From positions 3,758,747 to 3,822,746 of the forward strand of contig SMSO01000037.1 of the NCBI GenBank assembly GCA_004764695.1: a DNA stretch of 64,000 bases, read 5' to 3'. Under the pieces are notes generated by a model. It was not told where the DNA came from. It ran no database searches and saw nothing but the letters and a program-made list of their open reading frames with translations. A program made the translations under genes and the position numbers. Origin of the DNA: Schizochytrium sp. TIO01 (Eukaryota > Protista > Bigyra: Labyrinthulomycetes). Below, piece after piece: positions 2,523 to 11,000 of the stretch (its first letter is position 1; each line of letters begins with the position of its first letter).

Positions 2523-5500
2523 ATGTCTTTTATGCGAACGTCGGCAGCAGGAGACCGGGAGCACCAATGGGTTAAACAAGAGTCTCCTAAGGAGTACCGA
2601 TTTATGGCCGAGGATCAACTTGAGTTCAACCTGTTTCACCGTCGCTCACTTCTGCATCTTCAGAGGGTATGGAAAAACGTGAAGGAGCTTGTTCAGAAGC
2701 AAAGCCCTAGGGCTGCTCCGAGAGTATCCCTGAACCCCGAAGACTACTTTTCTGCTGTCGCAGAGAACTGGATTAATACTCATGCCAAATTACTTCAAGC
2801 AACTGGACTTAGCGTGGAAGATTCACGTCTTGAGGTTTTGTGCTTTATTGGGGTTTTATTCGCCATCGTACACTACAAGGGCGACTACGAAGAAGCCTTT
2901 CAGGAATTGAAAGAGATTTTGAAAGACGAGGAGTGTGAAGATTTCAAGATTGATCGTGAATGGTATTTTGATACTCTAAATCGCATCGCTTATCGCAAGC
3001 GTTCAACAGAAACGCTTGCAGACGATAATTTAGTATTACGGGATGCGCTGGAACCTTCACAACAAATCTGTACAACTCCAGGGCTTTGTCTGGCGCATCG
3101 CGAAGGGTCCGTTACCCTTGGTAGCCATGAAAATATGGCAAAGCAGGCTGATGTTGGCATAGGTAAAGATACTTTTCCTTCACAGCTGGCACAGGTGGAG
3201 GTTCTTAGTGACAGCGTCATCCACACCATGCTTGGGATTGCATATGTGCCTAGATCAACCCCTAACCTAGAACAGCATGGCAGTCTTGCAGGCTTAAATC
3301 ACCTGAATAGTATGCACAGAGGTCTTTTTAAAGGGACTCCTATGAAGGGTACATGGGTGTGCTCCCAGGCCGAACCGTGTGAGAAAAACCTCGGCCAAGC
3401 CTTGGAGGGCATCACGTATCTTTGGAGATGCGATCCTCGAGCCAAATGGAGCCCCTTCATTATTGATAATGCTTGCCATGAATCTTCTTTACAATCAGCA
3501 GAATCAAATTCGACATTTACTCACAAGGAGGAAATTGATGACGACGTGATTTCAATTGGAGACAGCGACGGTGACGAAGACAATGCTAATGGCCAACCAC
3601 AGGGGAATAGGCACCCAGAAAAGAGTCATGAAATTGCTGAGGACAACTTCCAGGTATCTACGAACCCGGCTTATGGAGGGTGCTTGTATTCTGCTAATCG
3701 ACTTTACGACACTTGTGATGCTCCTGAAGGTGCCTCACCGCGTCTGGTCACCTTATTGGTTTATAGCGATGCACACGCTATAGAAGAATTCAGTAAGACA
3801 AGACTACGGTCATATATGGAACTGGGTAACACTAGAGGGCGACAACAACCTCTAGTTAATGTTTTGTGCCTTCGTAGTATGACAGCCTTACGAGATTTCG
3901 AGAGCACGAAAATTCTCTTCTATCCACGAAAGAATGGTCAGGTGAACACCGAAACAAAATCAGTAGAAGTTGAACTTAATACCAAGGTTATTCCTCTGAC
4001 ATGCCTATGTGGTTCTTCTGACTGGCATGTCTTGCGTCGCTTCATGATTACTGGGGTAATGTGTCAAAAACTAGCCGAGCGAGACTTGGAACTACAGAGG
4101 TTGCTTGTTGAAAGTGCGGTCAATCCACTTGAAGACATGGGTGTGCTTGCTGATGAGTTCATGCAGGATTGGGCCTTTTCTTTATCCAGAGATACGATGA
4201 AGGCACAGTACACTGCACTTAACAACTTGCAAATGTTTTCAACAGTTGCAAAGCAGCCTTGGTGCAAAGATCTATTTCGCGCTGGCTTACTCTCAAGCCG
4301 ATCCCACCCTACCGTTGCTGTTTCATCCATCTTCGTTGGTAGTTTCGATCTACCTACATTAGGAACTGTAGTCAATTGCCCATGTGAAGTCCAGGTTCTG
4401 CGCTCGGCAGAACACGCAAAACGAATTTGTGAGAAATATGGAAACTACTTCTCTGTAGAACTTGATTCTGAAGCCTGGTGGGAAGCTGTTCCCCGAGCTA
4501 GTCGAGCTCAGATTCTTGCGCTTGCTGCAGTTTTTGATCATGATCATGTGATCCTTGTCATGGAGACTCAAGACACTACGATTGGATATGCGTGTATTGT
4601 TCAAATTCCGGAGAAAGTAAGGAGTCGCTTTCTTGCTACTTGCAAAAAGTTTGATCGGTACGTGTCTTGGGCGCATGATGGCCTTTACAACTCGACCTCA
4701 GGATCTTGCCAAATTCCCCGGAACTTATTTACTGCAAAGCAATCCAGTATTTTATCTTCCAATGTGATATTTTGGCGAGGTCTTATGAGAAGTGTCATCC
4801 AAAAAGGTCCACATGAGCCTGTAGGAAGTTTTAGCACCATGGCAGATGAAATTTACGGAAAGATTCACGAACAACAAAAACCAAGCCTTTGGGAGTTGAC
4901 AGAGACGACAACTCGCCCATTAGATCTAATCGGCGAAATACCGGGACCATCTAAACCATTTCCAGTCCCGAGAGCCTTTGAACAGAATATTGCAGATCTG
5001 TTTGTTCACACCGGACCTAATGCTACTTTGGAATCACTTTTTTATATTTTGGAGAATTCATTCCAGTTCCATCGAGTTGGTAAATTCATGACTTCTCAAA
5101 ATTTGTCCTCAGAACCGGCAGCCTTTTCAGAAAGCAATGTTGATGATAAAGTTGTTGATGAGGCAAGTACTTTCTTTTCTCACCGCGGCTCGGACTTTGA
5201 AGCATTCTTTGAGCAAACTTGGCGAGGTATCTTTGTTCAAGCAGCAATGCGTATCATCGAGAATTGTAAAAAGATGAGTCAGAACCTTGTTTCAGTTGAA
5301 ACTAGCACGTTTGACTTGCAAACACAGAACTTACAAAGGAGAAGTATGGAAACAGATAATTCTGAGTTGAGCACAAAAATAAATGCTAATTCTTCGAATT
5401 CGCGTATTCCTGTTCCAAAGCCTGTAGATCTGAAGCAAAGCAGTATTTCAGAGAATTCATATGAATCCTGTCAGCTGGGGATGAGTCATCAGGCCGGCGA

Positions 5501-8003
5501 GGCCGAATCTGTCAACCTTTGCATTCCAGCCCCCACCGAAAGTAATGACGAAGTTGATCTACCTTCCGCTTCCATTCCTATAGAAAGGCCCTCGTCAGCA
5601 GGGAACCAAGTACAACGAGTCGTTGAATCGAATGAAACATTAACAGAAAAGTCACAGACCGAAAGACTACCTAAGAACTCTGCTGACGAGAAGGGGTCAT
5701 TGCATTTGAAGAAGCAAACTCTTCGACCAGCTAAGTTAGAACCTAGGGCGCCCTTGCAGGACGGGGGAAGCAATCCAGCCGGTACCAGCCCAAGCCCGAG
5801 TATTGTCGTCAAAAGCGCAAATTCGATGTCCATGGAGATTCCGTTCCATACCAAAACATCGGTGGGTAGCAAAACAGGCGACCGTGAACTCATAGTCAGA
5901 TCTTCCAAGGCTCGAGAAGACGATCAATTTGTTCTGGTTCAAGGACAACATTCGCCTGAAGAGACCAGGGCACGCTTTAATCTACCAAACATGCGCGTGC
6001 AGCGCCTTAATAAAGATAGTGATCACCTGGCGTTGCTTTGTAAGTCAGATTTAGGTTTAGCGGAACCCGTTAAATGTACTATTTGTGACAGATCTTGCAC
6101 AACTGCATGTAAAATTTGTTCGGTTCCTTTGCATGACAGTGCAGAATGCTTTTCTTATTTTCATTCGGCTCATGTTATCAGTCATCAGCCTTGTAAAAAT
6201 ACAGCGAAATCAAATAACCTGCCTACCACGGTGCTCTGCAAAGACCCTGCGCAGACAAATAGTAAGAACGAGGAGCTTTCACTCGCAAAGCCTCTATGTA
6301 AACGAACGTCAGAGCCACCTTCATCGCTTTTAAATAACAGTACTGGTGTCCAAGTCAGCCCAATTGCTAGAATTGCGAAAAGCTCTTCTGGAGGTCAACA
6401 TGGTTCCAATACTAACAATGATGTCAACAAGAAAATAGACTATGGAAGTTGCCAAGGTGGCATTAAACCAAAAGATACGAAAGCACAGTCAAACACACTT
6501 GCCAAGTCGGTTCGCTTCGAGCTATGCAAGCTTTCTGATGATGAGAGTGATATTGAGTGTGACCTGAAGGAGCTCGGTATCGCTGGGAGTAATGAAGGTG
6601 AGCAAGTGAGTGTCTTAGATGATCCTCCTGTTGCTGTACCAGCTGCAAGACACGATGCAGAAAAGTTAAAAGTGACATATACTAGTTCAGGTCATCAAAG
6701 TATCTCTAGTCAAACTTCGCTCGCAGTAATTTCCGATTCAAGGCAAAAGTCCCAGTCTGATGCTCAACAGCAAAGCCCAAAGCAAAACACTGGTGTCGAG
6801 AATGTCAAGATTGGCTCGATCAGCGGATCCATAGACGTCGCTGTGAAGCACACTAAACACGTTCCTTCGATCGAAGGATGCGCGAGTTTTTCCTACGAAT
6901 GTGGAGAAGCTTTTCACGGGTCAACTCTCTCTCATACAGATGCTACGGTTCGCCATGGAAATACTTCAGCAGACGTCAAGGAAAAATCATCCAGTACTGG
7001 AGCCAGCAATTACACTAAGGTTTCTGGTAACAATGAAAATACTTCAGCAGACATCAAGGAAAAATCATCCAGTACTGGAGCCAACAATCACACAGAGGTT
7101 TCTGGTGACAATGAAAATACTTCAGCAGACATCAAGGAAAAATCATCCAGTACTGGAGCCAACAATCACACAGAGGTTTCTGGTGACAATGAAAATGCTT
7201 CAGCAGACATCAAGAAAAAATCATCCAGTACTGGAGCCAACAATCACACGGAGGTTTTGGGCCACCATGAAAACATTTCGGTAGACGGAAAGAAGACTTT
7301 GGTCAACAGCCTTTCGCAAAATCTGAGGAAATACCCCAAAGTTGTTCAAGACGTTGAATCTGCGGAGGATCGTGAGCGCCGGGATAAAACGGTTCGACAA
7401 GTGGAAAAAAAAATTAAGCGACGCTTAAAGAAGAAACCGCTAGATATAACAGGCGCACTTCTTGAATCATATTTAATGTTGAAGAAAACCTCTGATAGAC
7501 AGGACCGACTTCCAAACTGTTTAAGGTTTTTCAACCATAAGGTTGGTCGCGAACTCCGTACCTTCACAGACAATTGCCACAGTGCAGCTGCAATTGGTGC
7601 TGCTCGTAATAATTCGACGCTTTCTCAGGAATGCCTCTTGTGTGGAAGACAAACGAAAGTTTGGTGTAAAGGCTGCCGTGTGCCGTTACACACCAGCAAC
7701 AAAGAGACAGGCGAGCGGTCATGCTTTGAGATTTTTCATATGGACAAGAAGCTGGAATCAAGAACGGCAATGACGCGTAAACTAGATAGAGTGCCATCTT
7801 CTTCTTCATCCTCTTGTAAGCTTTCTCCCAAACCTCCAGTAAGCTCTAGCAATGTACTATCAGTGTCAGCATCGTCCTCATCTTTTCCTACTTATGAAAA
7901 ACGTGGGGAAAAGCGTAGTCCAAAGAGTAGTCCAAAGAGTAGCTCCGACACGTCAGATCCCAGGAAGCGCCCCAAAGTGTCTGATCACAAACCAATATCA
8001 TAA
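2523..8003 (+). CDS. 1826-aa protein derived from a piggyBac-like transposase, with an inserted YqaJ/lambda-exonuclease-like domain and two Cys-rich zinc-finger domains; catalytic motifs degenerate (probably domesticated)
   Basis: Long intact ATG-initiated ORF. piggyBac-like blocks: EVLCFIGVLFAI, TPGLCLAHRE, EVLSDSVIHTMLGI, WSPF, FWRGL...GPHEP...IYGK. YqaJ-like blocks: SDWHVLRRFMITG, GLLSSRSHPTVAVS, EVQ, RAQILALAAV. Two CxxC-x5-6-CxxC-xxPLH...CFxxFH fingers at 6075-6164 and 7632-7739. Confidence 0.75.
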   Translation: MSFMRTSAAGDREHQWVKQESPKEYRFMAEDQLEFNLFHRRSLLHLQRVWKNVKELVQKQSPRAAPRVSLNPEDYFSAVAENWINTHAKLLQATGLSVEDSRLEVLCFIGVLFAIVHYKGDYEEAFQELKEILKDEECEDFKIDREWYFDTLNRIAYRKRSTETLADDNLVLRDALEPSQQICTTPGLCLAHREGSVTLGSHENMAKQADVGIGKDTFPSQLAQVEVLSDSVIHTMLGIAYVPRSTPNLEQHGSLAGLNHLNSMHRGLFKGTPMKGTWVCSQAEPCEKNLGQALEGITYLWRCDPRAKWSPFIIDNACHESSLQSAESNSTFTHKEEIDDDVISIGDSDGDEDNANGQPQGNRHPEKSHEIAEDNFQVSTNPAYGGCLYSANRLYDTCDAPEGASPRLVTLLVYSDAHAIEEFSKTRLRSYMELGNTRGRQQPLVNVLCLRSMTALRDFESTKILFYPRKNGQVNTETKSVEVELNTKVIPLTCLCGSSDWHVLRRFMITGVMCQKLAERDLELQRLLVESAVNPLEDMGVLADEFMQDWAFSLSRDTMKAQYTALNNLQMFSTVAKQPWCKDLFRAGLLSSRSHPTVAVSSIFVGSFDLPTLGTVVNCPCEVQVLRSAEHAKRICEKYGNYFSVELDSEAWWEAVPRASRAQILALAAVFDHDHVILVMETQDTTIGYACIVQIPEKVRSRFLATCKKFDRYVSWAHDGLYNSTSGSCQIPRNLFTAKQSSILSSNVIFWRGLMRSVIQKGPHEPVGSFSTMADEIYGKIHEQQKPSLWELTETTTRPLDLIGEIPGPSKPFPVPRAFEQNIADLFVHTGPNATLESLFYILENSFQFHRVGKFMTSQNLSSEPAAFSESNVDDKVVDEASTFFSHRGSDFEAFFEQTWRGIFVQAAMRIIENCKKMSQNLVSVETSTFDLQTQNLQRRSMETDNSELSTKINANSSNSRIPVPKPVDLKQSSISENSYESCQLGMSHQAGEAESVNLCIPAPTESNDEVDLPSASIPIERPSSAGNQVQRVVESNETLTEKSQTERLPKNSADEKGSLHLKKQTLRPAKLEPRAPLQDGGSNPAGTSPSPSIVVKSANSMSMEIPFHTKTSVGSKTGDRELIVRSSKAREDDQFVLVQGQHSPEETRARFNLPNMRVQRLNKDSDHLALLCKSDLGLAEPVKCTICDRSCTTACKICSVPLHDSAECFSYFHSAHVISHQPCKNTAKSNNLPTTVLCKDPAQTNSKNEELSLAKPLCKRTSEPPSSLLNNSTGVQVSPIARIAKSSSGGQHGSNTNNDVNKKIDYGSCQGGIKPKDTKAQSNTLAKSVRFELCKLSDDESDIECDLKELGIAGSNEGEQVSVLDDPPVAVPAARHDAEKLKVTYTSSGHQSISSQTSLAVISDSRQKSQSDAQQQSPKQNTGVENVKIGSISGSIDVAVKHTKHVPSIEGCASFSYECGEAFHGSTLSHTDATVRHGNTSADVKEKSSSTGASNYTKVSGNNENTSADIKEKSSSTGANNHTEVSGDNENTSADIKEKSSSTGANNHTEVSGDNENASADIKKKSSSTGANNHTEVLGHHENISVDGKKTLVNSLSQNLRKYPKVVQDVESAEDRERRDKTVRQVEKKIKRRLKKKPLDITGALLESYLMLKKTSDRQDRLPNCLRFFNHKVGRELRTFTDNCHSAAAIGAARNNSTLSQECLLCGRQTKVWCKGCRVPLHTSNKETGERSCFEIFHMDKKLESRTAMTRKLDRVPSSSSSSCKLSPKPPVSSSNVLSVSASSSSFPTYEKRGEKRSPKSSPKSSSDTSDPRKRPKVSDHKPIS
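6960..7274 (+). repeat. In-frame coding tandem repeat, 78-bp (26-aa) unit, about 4 copies
   Basis: NTSAD[VI]K[EK]KSSSTGA[SN]N[YH]T[KE]VSG[ND]NE units start at 6960, 7038, 7116 and 7194 with near-identical DNA. Confidence 0.95.
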
Positions 8004-11000
8004 CTGCATCATTCCATCTCAAGTTTGAACTGTCTCATATGCTTTAAATACTAACATTACACGAATACATTACAAAGAATGCCTTGCTGCTTCACCGCAG
8101 CTCAATGAGTATACTATGTGTGCTTTTGTTTATCAAACAATATGTCCAGAGAAGCAATTTCTTTTCTTATGAAGATAGCAAATTTTTCGAACATAAGTAA
8201 CTGTTTTTCTATCCCACGAAAAGACATAATTTGTGAAACTCAAGACTTTAAAACGCACCAACTCTCTGTTGTATCAGGTAAAAATCTTTCCCACGGCATA
8301 CAATTCACAATAAGTATCGAATCTCTGCCTCTTTAAAAATTGAAGACCTCCAGTAAGTCCTACAATTTATTTAGCGTGAAAGTTAATGTTAAGATCTGTA
8401 ACTCATGTTCAACTAAATATCTATTTCCATTGAATCCTCATATTAGATTGGCTAGGTGCACGAGATTCTTAGAAAGTGACTGGAGGTCCTGCACTTTCAA
8501 CTTGATCCGGTAAACGTGACAAAGTTAAAAGTCGGCTCGGCTCTCAAACTATATTCTCTCTGGGTAGTGGACCTAGCATGTTATATTTAAGTCGTAAGCT
8601 TTCTCTTGAATAGCTGCCTAGTTTATACTGATTGCATTCTCATGAATCACGAGTTTGGCATTTTAAAACAAAACTTATCAAATCGCAACAAAGGAGCTAA
8701 TACCACAAGTATCATAAAAGTAACATTTTCTGCTAAGTTTCGACTGCTAACTAATATCGTACTAGCTAAGTATAATCATTCAATCGCATTCGCTACCTGA
8801 AGCTTAGATTTACTCTATAAATAGTACTCTACTAAGAGTATACAACTGAGAAGCAATGATTATCATCTTTTGGTCAGCAATACCCTATTGTCCTTGGGTT
8901 GTGAACAAAGGGCGCACATCATAGAGTGGTGCATAAATTGATTCTATGCTAGGTTTATTAGCTATAATAGAATTTCCAGCTATTATGATGAGATGTCGCT
9001 TCGTTTGCCTCAAAAGATTTGCAGAATAATCTTGTCGGCAGATTTGGCTATGAGATTGATGAGGCATTGTCCGCATCTTTAAAGCTTGTGGCCAAAGTAG
9101 ATGTGGATAATCCTATAACAAAGCAGCGCAATATGATTGATCAACGTGAATTATAATTCCGTACCGTGCGATCTGAGCATTCTTCAAGCCTGTGCAGACC
9201 TTATGATGCTACTACCGTATGGGTTATATTTTCACACAAATGATCAGACAATTCTACTATACAGATGGCAACCTTCAAGCTCATCTCATTCCTTTAAAGT
9301 AAACTCCTGGTACTTCATTTACCAGAGCCTGGCTGGTTGGATGGTCAGTGGAGTAGCGCTTAGAGTGCCTATAGTGAGACAGGAAAGTTTTTTTCTTCTT
9401 TTTTTAAAGATATCTTCGCGGCGTTCTCTTGAGAACGTTAAAGATACGTGACTTTGAGGCCACACAATTTGGCTCAGCAGAACCCGGAAATTAAGTGTAC
9501 TCCTTTCGGCTACCCACAATTACTCCATGCAGACCGAGGATCCCGCAAGTGCCAGCACGTGCGTGGACAGACCGCACATTTGTTTTTGCATAAAACTTCC
9601 GCGTCAAGTATGAGGGAACCTCTAGTTGCTAATCACAGATCAACTGATAGACCAACAGGCAAGGGGGGAGACGAGCAGACAACCAGGCAACCAGACAACT
9701 TGAACTAACCGAACGTGCCGCCAGCTTGATCTATCACACTAAAGATACCGAAGGTATGGCTTTTAAAAGGAGGAGGAGCAATAGTTATTAGAGTTCATAG
9801 GCTCTTTGCAGCAGCTCAAAGCCCTGTGGAGTGAGGCAAATCGGTTCCAAGGATCGCGGTTTCATAGCAGCATGAAGTTAAGCTCAAGTGCTGAGTTTTC
9901 TGTTCCTTCGAGTCAAAGCTGAAGTTCAAAATTTCCTTCCTAAACAATCATGGTAGGAACCAAGCTAGTAGTAGTCTACGCACGTGAAAGTTAGTTTGAG
10001 AGAGAATGAAAGCCTTCAGATTATCCTCGTGAGGCCAGCAGGATCCGCTCGCGTATTTAATTGATTCACTATCACGTCACGCCCAAGTCAGCACCCCACA
10101 AGAATTACAAGGCCTGCTACAAGGCCCTGCCTAGCTAGCTAGCCAGCTAGCTTCGCTACCTACTTACGCGCTACGGACACGCAATTCTACAGCGCTGATA
10201 CCTTGCCTTGAAAAGATTGCTGCCGTAGAATCAGCACGTGCAAGCAACCCGGAGGTCTATTCCTGGCGTTCCCCAATCCATCGCTCGCTCGATTCTTCAA
10301 TGTTCTTTAATTATAAACAAATAACTACTACCTACCTACCCACCTACAGTGCAGCTAGTAGTTAGGGTTTGTTAGGTGATAGTAGGTAGGGGGTGAAAGA
10401 AAGTGGTTAGGGGTTCTTAGTGTTCACTAGGACTCTCTCTCCCCCTTTCAGGCCGCTCGTTGAACTTTTTACAGTGCAAGTTTGGCAAGTGCCGCAAAAT
10501 TCCGTAATTTGCGGTGTCTGGCGGTTCGGGCACGGCGGTTTAAAGGGCTGTGAGGGACCTCTGCAGGGAGTATTTGAGGAGCGTTTGCGGCTTTGGAGTT
10601 GCGTGTTAGTTATTCTTCCGGCATCATCAGCGAGCACCTTGAAGTCACCGTCTCCAGAGGCGAGTTTTCTTTTCACGTGCCACGGCCTTCTTTCACCTAC
10701 AGCTATCTCTCTCTCTCAGATAGCAGTTGACTAAGTAGAACTCTAAGAGGAGACGAGTCGACCCTCCATCTTGGCCTGCTCACGCACCTTTTCCATTCAA
10801 GCTTCTGTCAGCCGCGTAAGTCACGGCGATCTCCGCTTCAGGTCTGCAAAGGCTGACTCAGGACAGAAGTATAGGTTTCTTACAGGCAGGCCCTGTCCTG
10901 CTTCGCTGGCAGACACTCTCGTGAGGTAGTCAGGCAATGACAACTTAGGATCTTTCAGCACCTTGGGACTACAGAAATCACTTCGCTGGCCAGGGTCTAG

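What the first reader, a model, noticed from the sequence alone, without database searches (positions are those of the whole stretch)
2523..5090. Apparently domesticated, doubly dead transposase-exonuclease chimera (piggyBac-like DDD fold interrupted by a YqaJ/lambda-exonuclease fold)
Seen: in the first ~850 aa the motifs fall in the order of a piggyBac-type transposase. EVLCFIGVLFAI resembles ELKAFIG. TPGLCLAHRE sits where active enzymes read TPGxxLSIDE. EVLSDS..HTMLGI resembles WVLCDS..GY. TWVCSQ occupies the second-Asp position, and IYGKIHEQQ replaces YNKxxGGVD. Between the second and third catalytic positions (aa ~490-700, nt ~3990-4620) lies a PD-(D/E)xK YqaJ-like domain: DWHVLRRFMITG resembles W...R..ITAS, GLLSSRSHPTVAVSSI resembles GL..HPWLGASPD, EVQ replaces EIK, and RAQILALAAV resembles YxQvQxQM. 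Known: I recall transposons with this nested layout from oomycetes and red algae (Repbase piggyBacX-type), but this is from memory and unverified. Inference: the catalytic acids of both nucleases appear replaced, yet the 5.5-kb ORF is intact and I see no TIRs. That suggests a host-recruited, non-catalytic DNA/chromatin-binding scaffold, possibly in genome defence or as partner of an active transposase (compare the catalytically inactive Pgm-like proteins of Paramecium).
Basis: partly seen in the sequence, partly recalled or inferred. Interest (0 to 1): 0.85.

Follow-up and report, generated by a model that had tools for sequence, protein, structure and literature searches.

The report
Dead piggyBac-exonuclease transposase turned host gene
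This single-copy 1826-residue gene of a thraustochytrid protist descends from a jumping-gene enzyme (a piggyBac transposase with a lambda-exonuclease-type nuclease nested inside it); it has lost nearly all the catalytic residues of both enzymes, yet its fold is kept under selection, so the host has probably recruited it.

Summary
ORF 2523-8003 (+, 1826 aa) has no Pfam hit of its own. A profile built from it and three paralogues in the same genome finds 547 relatives. The family consensus is a piggyBac DDD transposase with a YqaJ/lambda-exonuclease domain nested between the second and third Asp, plus a piggyBac-type Cys-rich C-terminal domain.

- **Fold:** an AlphaFold model of aa 1-870 (pLDDT 79.8) matches piggyBac transposase (Z 15.7, residues 43-860). 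Nested inside that, it matches lambda exonuclease (Z 13.6, residues 487-752).
- **Catalytic residues:** 32 of 44 fully covered relatives keep all seven. This protein keeps one (E622).
- **Not a transposon copy:** it is single-copy, has no TIRs or TSD, and sits between ordinary genes.
- **Selection:** across four public runs the ORF stays open, with in-frame indels only. The listed SNPs give 13 synonymous to 3 non-synonymous changes in the dead-enzyme part (pN/pS about 0.07).
- **Active relative:** the same genome holds a 4,489-bp element of this family, with 7 identical copies, CCCTGGCTA termini and 4-bp TSDs. Earlier agents of this scan already described that element on other DNA.

Domestication is well supported. 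The function, probably a non-catalytic DNA-binding scaffold, is inferred. I rate it a new variant of a known kind.

The parts
2523..8003 (+). Whole gene: a single uninterrupted ORF of 1826 aa (stop codon included)
   Evidence: Public-run contigs lie colinear on it with no joints.
2559..3863 (+). piggyBac-type N-terminal helical region and first part of the RNase-H-like catalytic core (aa about 13-447). It holds the D1 position (aa 193-201, nt 3099-3125, no Asp) and the D2 position (Q282, nt 3366-3368).
   Evidence: Family profile alignment. The model matches piggyBac STC 6x67_C at Z 15.7 over residues 43-860.
3981..4778 (+). Nested YqaJ/lambda-exonuclease-fold domain (aa about 487-752). Catalytic positions are N568, I603, E622 and Q624, where the family has E, D, E and K.
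   Evidence: Lambda exonuclease 3sm4_C matches at Z 13.6 with 211 of 229 residues aligned, model range 487-752. Foldseek's top hits are lambda exonuclease and LHK-Exo. YqaJ Pfam hits occur in 16 of 49 homologues. This is also the best-conserved stretch among the four paralogues.
4800..5102 (+). Second part of the piggyBac catalytic core (aa about 760-860). It holds the 'YN..K.GGxD' helix, which here reads YGKIHEQQK, so D3 -> K786.
   Evidence: The piggyBac structural alignment resumes after the insert and runs to residue 860.
5103..5939 (+). Low-complexity linker, probably disordered (aa 861-1139)
   Evidence: No family conservation. Non-synonymous changes predominate beyond aa 860.
5940..6164 (+). 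First piggyBac-type C-terminal module: FN..R..RL..H, then the Cys-rich zinc ribbon C1185-x2-C-x7-C-x2-C-x4-H-x4-C-x4-H1214
   Evidence: The profile of these modules hits the piggyBat transposase Cys-rich domain (9c0f_C residues 515-576) at E 3.4e-5.
6955..7257 (+). In-frame tandem repeat, 78 nt x 3.9 (26-aa Ser/Asn/Glu-rich units), lying between the two zinc-ribbon modules
   Evidence: Short-read contigs break here.
7506..7739 (+). Second copy of the piggyBac-type C-terminal module, with zinc ribbon C1704...H1739
   Evidence: (52 bits to the family HMM).

Best explanation
The gene is a host-recruited ('domesticated') descendant of a piggyBac-superfamily transposase. It comes from a subclass in which a complete YqaJ/lambda-exonuclease nuclease is inserted in the catalytic core between the second and third Asp.

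In this copy the DDD triad is gone and three of the four nuclease residues are gone. It therefore most likely cannot cut or join DNA. What selection keeps is the fold of the double-enzyme body and two copies of the piggyBac Cys-rich DNA-binding zinc ribbon.

The most likely mode of action is non-catalytic: a nuclear protein that binds DNA through its tandem Cys-rich domains and uses the dead transposase/nuclease body as an oligomerisation or partner-binding scaffold. Descent, architecture, loss of catalytic residues, single-copy state and purifying selection are shown here. DNA binding, nuclear location and the scaffold role are inferred from what the same domains do in piggyBac.
For: - Family and architecture: a profile of W plus three paralogues finds 547 proteins at E<=1e-3. 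The consensus is DD...DRGY...[W..R..TGT, NE, SPDG, EIK, R.Q.LHQA]...YN..K.G.D...CxxC..CxxC.V.L(C/H)..C..WH. Pfam PF13843 matches 7 of 49 members and PF09588 matches 16 of 49.
- Structure: the AF2 model has pLDDT 79.8 and pTM 0.82. It matches piggyBac 6x67_C at Z 15.7 and piggyBat at Z 14.2 over residues 43-860, and lambda exonuclease at Z 13.6 over 487-752.
- Cys-rich domain: the module profile hits the piggyBat Cys-rich domain at E 3.4e-5.
- Dead: W has G/S, Q, K, N, I, E, Q at the seven catalytic positions, while 32 of 44 fully covered relatives have D, D, D, E, D, E, K.
- Host gene: the only other matches in the 64-Mb genome are three paralogues at <=29% identity. There are no flanking TIRs or TTAA/CCC signatures, and the neighbours are ordinary genes.
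- Selection: in four runs with four organism labels the ORF is colinear and its indels are 3 and 12 nt. The listed SNPs split 13 synonymous to 3 non-synonymous in aa 1-860 (pN/pS about 0.07, binomial p 9e-7), against 8 to 16 beyond aa 860.
- Age of such lineages: the paralogue on L010 pairs with a Hondaea fermentalgiana relative (GBG26106.1, 36% identity) that is also dead, so this dead lineage probably predates the split of the two genera.
Against: - No orthologue of W itself was found outside its own species group, so deep conservation of this particular gene is not shown.
- The SNP count uses 40 listed differences; 17 more were not shown.
- Transcription is not proven. The runs are only guessed to be RNA and are held as contigs.
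- W itself hits no Pfam model, so all family assignment goes through homologues and the predicted structure.
- The D1 register is ambiguous, and a Glu (E195) lies near it.
- No experiment bears on DNA binding or partners.
Confidence: 0.8

Rival explanations
1. It regulates the active piggyBac-YqaJ element of the same genome, or acts as a non-catalytic partner of it. The dead protein would bind the element's ends or its transposase and either repress transposition (as Tn5 inhibitor and P-element KP repressors do) or assist a catalytic relative (as PgmL proteins assist PiggyMac in Paramecium). This is a more specific version of the best explanation, not a contradiction of it.
For: The genome holds 7 identical 4,489-bp copies and one 98% copy of an intact element of the same family, with all seven catalytic residues, CCCTGGCTA termini and 4-bp TSDs. 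W keeps two Cys-rich domains of the type that binds transposon ends in piggyBac. At least four dead full-length paralogues and two truncated ones coexist, which recalls the multi-paralogue Pgm/PgmL set.
Against: W and the active transposase lie in distant clades of the family tree, and BLASTP finds no W-to-active-element pair; they are linked only through the profile. Hetero-oligomerisation or shared end recognition is therefore not expected by default. No match to the element's terminal sequence lies near W. Nothing was tested for binding.
Confidence: 0.15
2. It is a decaying, immobilised transposon relic whose long ORF survives by chance, with no host function.
For: Catalytic residues are lost. 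No close orthologue was found in other genera. The C-terminal two thirds is low-complexity and evolves fast. W sits on a long branch.
Against: A 5.5-kb ORF without a stop is very unlikely to persist at roughly 25% identity to its nearest relatives without selection. There are 13 synonymous to 3 non-synonymous changes in aa 1-860, and only in-frame indels. The family's non-catalytic core residues are retained (W501, W550, G588, S601, V670, W716, P766). The fold is modelled confidently.
Confidence: 0.04
3. It is still an enzyme that uses non-canonical residues, for example E195 near D1 and E622 in the nuclease site.
For: E622 of the ExK motif is kept, and a Glu sits one residue from one possible D1 register.
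Against: D2 and D3 are Gln and Lys. The nuclease has lost its motif-II Glu, the PD Asp and the Lys. No two-metal site can be built from what is left, going by established knowledge of RNase-H-like and PD-(D/E)xK active sites.
Confidence: 0.01

Closest known systems
Domesticated piggyBac-derived genes (human PGBD1-5 and the CSB-PGBD3 fusion; the catalytically inactive PiggyMac-like PgmL1-5 of Paramecium; Tetrahymena Tpb/Lia5) - named from my own knowledge
   Same: A single-copy host gene descended from a piggyBac transposase, without TIRs. The fold and the C-terminal Cys-rich domain are kept. As in PgmL proteins and several PGBDs, the catalytic triad is lost. Several paralogues sit in one genome.
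   Different: The ancestor carried a whole lambda-exonuclease-type nuclease inside the catalytic core, and that second enzyme is dead too. W has two Cys-rich modules. The host is a thraustochytrid, a group not known for programmed genome rearrangement. No function is known.
piggyBac and piggyBat transposases (PDB 6x67, 9c0f; Pfam PF13843 and PF13842)
   Same: The overall fold matches at Z 15.7 and 14.2. The Cys-rich domain matches piggyBat at E 3.4e-5. The intact relative in this genome has CCC...GGG termini and 4-bp TSDs.
   Different: There is a roughly 270-residue nuclease insert between D2 and D3. W lacks D, D and D, and W itself falls below every Pfam threshold. The active relative's TSDs are WTAD-like (TTAA, TTAG, ATAA, ATAG, ATAT) rather than strictly TTAA.
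The intact piggyBac-YqaJ transposon of this same genome (1171-aa transposase, 4,489 bp), already described by this scan on other DNA (s1-834066 and others)
   Same: Same domain order: N-terminal helical region, D1, D2, YqaJ insert, D3, Cys-rich domain. Both belong to the same HMM-defined family (267 bits for the active element).
   Different: The active element is multicopy and TIR-flanked, and keeps all seven catalytic residues. W is single-copy with no TIRs, keeps one of seven, is 650 aa longer with a duplicated Cys-rich module, and lies in a distant clade.
[quoted passage not shown]
   Same: A DDD/E cut-and-paste transposase is associated with a PD-(D/E)xK lambda-exonuclease-like nuclease.
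   Different: In those elements the nuclease is a separate ORF or a C-terminal addition, in other superfamilies. Here it is nested inside the piggyBac catalytic core, and in W it is inactivated.

Membership tests
piggyBac superfamily transposase (PF13843 DDE_Tnp_1_7) | RNase-H-like catalytic fold with piggyBac/IS4-type architecture | tested here: met
   The AF2 model matches 6x67_C at Z 15.7, rmsd 4.5, with 335 residues aligned over model residues 43-860. It matches piggyBat at Z 14.2 and Tn5 at about Z 14.
piggyBac superfamily transposase (PF13843 DDE_Tnp_1_7) | Pfam model match above the gathering score | tested here: not met
   W has no hit even at E<=10. The feature is met only by homologues: P0008 scores 29.9 bits against a cut-off of 22.4, and 7 of 49 members match with a best E of 6e-11.
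piggyBac superfamily transposase (PF13843 DDE_Tnp_1_7) | Catalytic D-D-D triad | tested here: not met
   D1 -> G200/S201 (or R194/E195 in the other register), D2 -> Q282, D3 -> K786.
piggyBac superfamily transposase (PF13843 DDE_Tnp_1_7) | C-terminal Cys-rich zinc-binding domain | tested here: met
   Two copies are present (aa 1185-1214 and 1704-1739). The module profile hits the piggyBat Cys-rich domain at E 3.4e-5. PF13842 itself did not reach threshold on family members.
piggyBac superfamily transposase (PF13843 DDE_Tnp_1_7) | Element structure: TIRs ending CCC/GGG and a 4-bp (TTAA) target-site duplication | tested here: not met
   No flanking inverted repeat, no TTAACCC/GGGTTAA pair and no match to the active element's terminus lies around W. 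The feature is met by the intact relative.
YqaJ / lambda-exonuclease PD-(D/E)xK nucleases (PF09588) | Lambda-exonuclease fold | tested here: met
   3sm4_C matches at Z 13.6 with 211 of 229 residues aligned, model range 487-752. Entries 1avq, 3slp, 6m9k and LHK-Exo match at Z 12-13.6. The top Foldseek rows show probability 1.00.
YqaJ / lambda-exonuclease PD-(D/E)xK nucleases (PF09588) | Pfam model match | tested here: not met
   W has no hit. 16 of 49 homologues match, with a best E of 3e-9. hhalign of the 4-paralogue profile against the genome's genuine YqaJ protein aligned only the first motif, at probability 2.9%.
YqaJ / lambda-exonuclease PD-(D/E)xK nucleases (PF09588) | Catalytic E ... (P)D ... 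ExK residues | tested here: not met
   W has N568, I603, E622 and Q624, so only the ExK Glu remains.
Domesticated transposase gene | Single-copy, immobile, intact ORF | tested here: met
   The ORF is colinear and open in 4 runs.
Domesticated transposase gene | Purifying selection on the coding sequence | tested here: met
   In aa 1-860 there are 13 synonymous and 3 non-synonymous changes on 573 and 2007 sites (pN/pS about 0.07, p 9e-7). All indels are in-frame. Limits: these are within-species-group differences only, and 17 further differences were not listed.
Domesticated transposase gene | Orthologues at the same locus in other species | tested here: inconclusive
   No close homologue of W turned up in two word-indexed searches. 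The nearest relatives in the top 150 profile hits are 25-30% identical. The paralogue on L010 does have a Hondaea relative that is also dead.
Domesticated transposase gene | Expression | tested here: inconclusive
   21 runs from 9 studies hold the gene, but their RNA label is a guess and they are held as contigs. Contigs from three runs end 380-387 nt upstream of the ATG, in non-repetitive sequence. That would fit a transcript end but does not prove one.

The most novel reading that the evidence does not exclude
W, its dead paralogues (on L008, L009 and L010) and the two core-less relatives (on L021 and L022) form a multi-subunit, non-catalytic DNA-targeting scaffold. It would work with, or police, a catalytically competent member of the same dual-nuclease family. 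That would be a thraustochytrid counterpart of the ciliate PiggyMac/PgmL machinery, implying either regulated DNA excision or a dedicated transposon-control system in a lineage where neither is known.
Probability: 0.12. Interest if true: 0.85.

Novelty: new variant of a known kind. Interest (0 to 1): 0.6.

Why it matters
Domesticated piggyBac genes are a textbook case of hosts reusing transposases, as in ciliate genome rearrangement and the vertebrate PGBD genes. This gene extends that to a subclass that no paper I could search describes: a piggyBac with a lambda-exonuclease nested in its catalytic core. It also extends it to thraustochytrids, which are of biotechnological interest.

Both enzymes were silenced here while the fold stayed under strong constraint. 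That implies the double-nuclease body has a structural use of its own.

One genome holds the active element, four full-length dead paralogues and two truncated ones. That gives a natural series for asking what the nested nuclease does in transposition, and what is kept when catalysis is lost.

Tried and rejected
- Pfam on W and on the three paralogues found nothing.
- A PDB sequence search with the 4-paralogue core profile gave only chance hits.
- hhalign of that thin profile against the genome's genuine YqaJ gene aligned only the first motif, at probability 2.9%. The deeper family alignment was needed.
- Two word-indexed homologue searches for W, on region 440-800 and on aa 1-870, found nothing. 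This shows only that no close relative of suitable length is in that collection.
- Foldseek alone gave no E<=1e-3, though its top rows were already lambda exonucleases, Tn5 and piggyBac. The VIA re-alignment gave clear Z scores.
- My first tree attempt timed out in MAFFT. I replaced it with an HMM-based alignment and a quick tree. In that tree the W + L009 pairing joins two long branches and should not be relied on.
- One DNA alignment of two element copies was made in the wrong orientation and is uninformative. blastn replaced it.
- The inverted repeat I4 (86-103 / 9553-9570, 18 nt, 83% complementary) does flank the ORF. I reject it as a TIR because it is imperfect, encloses another gene region and has no piggyBac-like termini.
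- Literature searches for 'piggyBacX', piggyBac+YqaJ, piggyBac+thraustochytrid and YqaJ+transposase+dinoflagellate found no description of this architecture.
- I did not use complex prediction, because I make no binding claim that it could decide.
Full report
**What is there.** The window holds one long open frame, 2523-8003 on the + strand, 1826 codons. It lies in an intron-poor eukaryotic region. Its neighbours are ordinary genes: PIP5K, aldehyde dehydrogenase, an ABC transporter and a reprolysin-like peptidase. The window is C36:3758747-3822746 of a 64-Mb, 37-contig assembly. Run against Pfam, the protein gives nothing, even at E<=10.

**Family.**
- Searching the genome with aa 1-860 finds three more loci. 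They share aa about 448-791 at 22-27% identity and share a C-terminal CxxC...CxxC.VPLH...C..(F/W)H module.
- A profile of the four cores was scored against 1.84 billion representative proteins. It finds 547 proteins at E<=1e-3 and 29 at E<=1e-30, many of them 1000-1200 aa long.
- Some of these hit Pfam directly. P0008 comes from MMETSP0963/0964 transcriptomes. It has PF13843 (piggyBac DDE) over profile positions 20-228 of 349, above the gathering score, followed by YqaJ PF09588.
- Of 49 members scanned, 16 match YqaJ (best E 3e-9) and 7 match PF13843 (best E 6e-11).
- The 63- and 49-sequence alignments give this consensus...lDD...DRGY... / ...ADWF.LR.F..TGT...NE...GL....P..AVSPDG...VEIKT...R.Q.LHQA.V... 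/ ...YN..K.G.D...R.....H....C..C.......C..C.V.L(C/H)....C...WH. That is a piggyBac DDD transposase with a complete YqaJ/lambda-exonuclease nuclease inserted between the second and third Asp, followed by a Cys-rich domain.
- A profile of the C-terminal modules hits the Cys-rich domain of the solved piggyBat transposase (9c0f_C residues 515-576) at E 3.4e-5.

**Structure.** An AlphaFold2 model of aa 1-870, made with the 49-sequence alignment, has mean pLDDT 79.8 and pTM 0.82. Foldseek's top rows are lambda exonuclease and LHK-Exo, Tn5 transposase and piggyBac, although its E-values are weak (2.6e-3 to 2.7e-2). Re-alignment with VIA-align gives these matches:

| Match | Z | Aligned | Model residues |
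|---|---|---|---|
| piggyBac strand-transfer complex 6x67_C | 15.7 | 335 residues | 43-860 |
| piggyBat 9c0f_D | 14.2 | 335 residues | 17-858 |
| Tn5 transposase | about 14 | about 300 residues | about 53-859 |
| lambda exonuclease 3sm4_C | 13.6 | 211 of 229 residues | 487-752 |

**Catalytic residues.** Among 44 family members that cover all positions, 32 have D, D, D (transposase) and E, D, E, K (nuclease).

| Position | Family | W |
|---|---|---|
| D1 | D | G200/S201 (profile register) or R194/E195 (if modelled strand 189-196 is beta-1) |
| D2 | D | Q282 |
| D3 | D | K786 |
| YqaJ motif-II Glu | E | N568 |
| YqaJ PD Asp | D | I603 |
| YqaJ ExK Glu | E | E622 (kept) |
| YqaJ ExK Lys | K | Q624 |

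The three paralogues have also lost the DDD triad and most nuclease residues. Non-catalytic core residues of the family are retained in W: P311, T493, W501, W550, G588, S601, V670, W716 and P766.

**Mobile or host gene?**
- W is single-copy. Nothing else in the genome exceeds 29% identity.
- No inverted repeat with piggyBac-like ends flanks it, and no TTAACCC/GGGTTAA pair is present. The one TTAACCC hit lies inside the ORF, and one hit is below chance expectation. Nothing resembles the active element's terminus.
- 21 public runs from 9 studies hold the gene at 77-89% of sampled words.
- I laid four of them, carrying four organism labels, on the ORF. Contigs are colinear with no joints, and the only indels are +GCC at 6450 and -12 nt at 7915, both in frame.
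- Of the 40 listed substitutions, aa 1-860 has 13 synonymous and 3 non-synonymous changes on 573 and 2007 sites. That gives pN/pS of about 0.07 and a binomial p of 9e-7 against neutrality.
- The low-complexity remainder has 8 synonymous and 16 non-synonymous changes (about 0.58). The two regions differ by Fisher's test at p 0.004.
- So the dead double-enzyme body is under strong purifying selection. Limits: 17 further differences were not listed, and all comparisons are within a near-identical species group.
- Transcription is not shown. The runs are only guessed to be RNA. Contigs of three runs stop 380-387 nt upstream of the ATG in unique sequence, which would fit a 5' end but does not prove one.

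**Evolutionary context.**
- A quick maximum-likelihood tree on 727 HMM-aligned columns puts W with the L009 paralogue. Support is 99, but both are long branches, so the pairing is unsafe.
- These two group with the L008 paralogue and Hondaea fermentalgiana GBG26396.1 (P0004). P0004 keeps all seven residues. The group sits inside a clade of intact members (support 98).
- The L010 paralogue is in a separate clade with H. fermentalgiana GBG26106.1 (P0013), which is 36% identical over the full length and also dead. P0016 and P0019, partly dead, are there too.
- Loss of catalysis therefore happened more than once among thraustochytrid copies, and at least one dead lineage probably predates the split of the two genera.
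- Named relatives elsewhere include a Durusdinium trenchii 'YqaJ domain-containing protein' (CAK9090653.1).

**The active relative.**
- Searching the genome with the intact P0008 revealed a multicopy 1171-aa ORF. It aligns to the family HMM at 267 bits and has LDDD, DRGY, NEA, SPDG, EIK and GGVD.
- The element is 4,489 bp, with 7 copies at 100% identity, one at 98%, and fragments.
- Its termini are CCCTGGCTA...TAGCCAGGG. Its 4-bp target duplications read TTAA, TTAG (twice), ATAA (twice), ATAG and ATAT.
- Earlier agents of this scan had already described this element on other DNA, and my results agree with theirs. Unchecked first-reader notes also flagged the dead paralogues.
- Two short relatives, 434 and 424 aa, keep only the N-terminal helical part and the Cys-rich module.

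**Interpretation.**
- Shown: descent from a piggyBac-YqaJ transposase, retention of both folds and of two Cys-rich modules, loss of six of seven catalytic residues, single-copy immobile state, and purifying selection on aa 1-860.
- Inferred: the protein acts without catalysis. The likely mode is DNA binding through the tandem Cys-rich domains, which recognise transposon-end DNA in piggyBac, with the dead body serving as an oligomerisation or partner platform. Basic clusters near the C-terminus (KKIKRRLKKKP, PRKRPK) would fit nuclear import.
- A more specific version is regulation or partnership with the active element, after the Pgm/PgmL or inhibitor-protein models. This is possible, but the deep divergence between W and the active transposase weakens it.
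- A decaying relic and a cryptically active enzyme are both disfavoured.

**Known or new.**
- Domesticated, catalytically dead piggyBac derivatives are well known (my own knowledge: PGBDs, PgmL).
- Lambda-exonuclease-type accessories are known in ISL2EU as a separate ORF (PMC4122938) and in KolobokE downstream of the transposase (PMC9587614).
- I found no paper describing a YqaJ domain nested in a piggyBac core, and none holding the word 'piggyBacX'. Repbase itself could not be consulted.
- I class this gene as a new variant of a known kind, and note that the parent architecture was already reported by this scan.

Noticed in passing
L019:2257-6745 (G000:C32:1161756-1166244); other copies at C34:2487066, C31:7185227, C24:5507822, C24:5428672, C17:2442, C5:1192156, and C34:603142 (98%): An intact, recently active 4,489-bp piggyBac-YqaJ transposon. 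There are 7 copies at 100% identity and one at 98%. It encodes a 1171-aa transposase with all seven catalytic residues, has 9-bp perfect termini CCCTGGCTA/TAGCCAGGG, and makes 4-bp TSDs that are not strictly TTAA (TTAA, TTAG x2, ATAA x2, ATAG, ATAT). The scan had already reported it on other DNA.
   Followed up: yes
L008:5135-8396(-), L009:5070-8576(-), L010:4668-8366(-): Three further full-length paralogues (1168-1232 aa) with the same nested architecture and lost catalytic residues. The L008 gene appears as two ORFs separated by a short gap, but matches a single 1219-aa protein (P0002) in public data. The L010 paralogue pairs with a Hondaea fermentalgiana relative that is also dead (GBG26106.1).
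   Followed up: partly
L021:3523-4827(-) and L022:3847-5121(-): Two short relatives (434 and 424 aa). They keep only the family's N-terminal helical region and the C-terminal Cys-rich module, with the whole catalytic core and nuclease missing.
   Followed up: partly
L005:28-2826(+), L006:778-3309(+), L007: Three conventional piggyBac (PF13843) loci without a nuclease insert in the same genome. Two are long intact ORFs of 932 and 843 aa.
   Followed up: no
L011:1285-2508(-) (G000:C36:~4088765): A stand-alone 407-aa gene with a canonical YqaJ domain (GASPDG, EIK, YYMAQVQGQ). It is the only locus in the genome over the PF09588 cut-off.
   Followed up: no
window:6955-7257, 7910-7942 and 6450: An in-frame 78-nt x 3.9 tandem repeat (26-aa units) lies between the two zinc-ribbon modules. 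All four runs lack 12 nt at 7915, inside a 12-nt repeat, and one run has an extra GCC after 6450. These are length polymorphisms that keep the frame.
   Followed up: partly
window:~2137-2143 and ~8216-8306: Public-run contigs from three studies end 380-387 nt upstream of the ATG in unique sequence, and 213-303 nt beyond the stop. This fits transcript ends if those runs are RNA, which is not established.
   Followed up: partly
P0004 (Hondaea fermentalgiana GBG26396.1, 2180 aa): The public gene model, annotated as 'Cytochrome c peroxidase, mitochondrial', joins a peroxidase domain (aa 79-323) to a catalytically intact piggyBac-YqaJ protein. It is probably a merged gene model.
   Followed up: no
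window:2124-2639 (-): A 171-aa GTG-started ORF lies antisense across the start of the gene. It has no support and is probably spurious.
   Followed up: no
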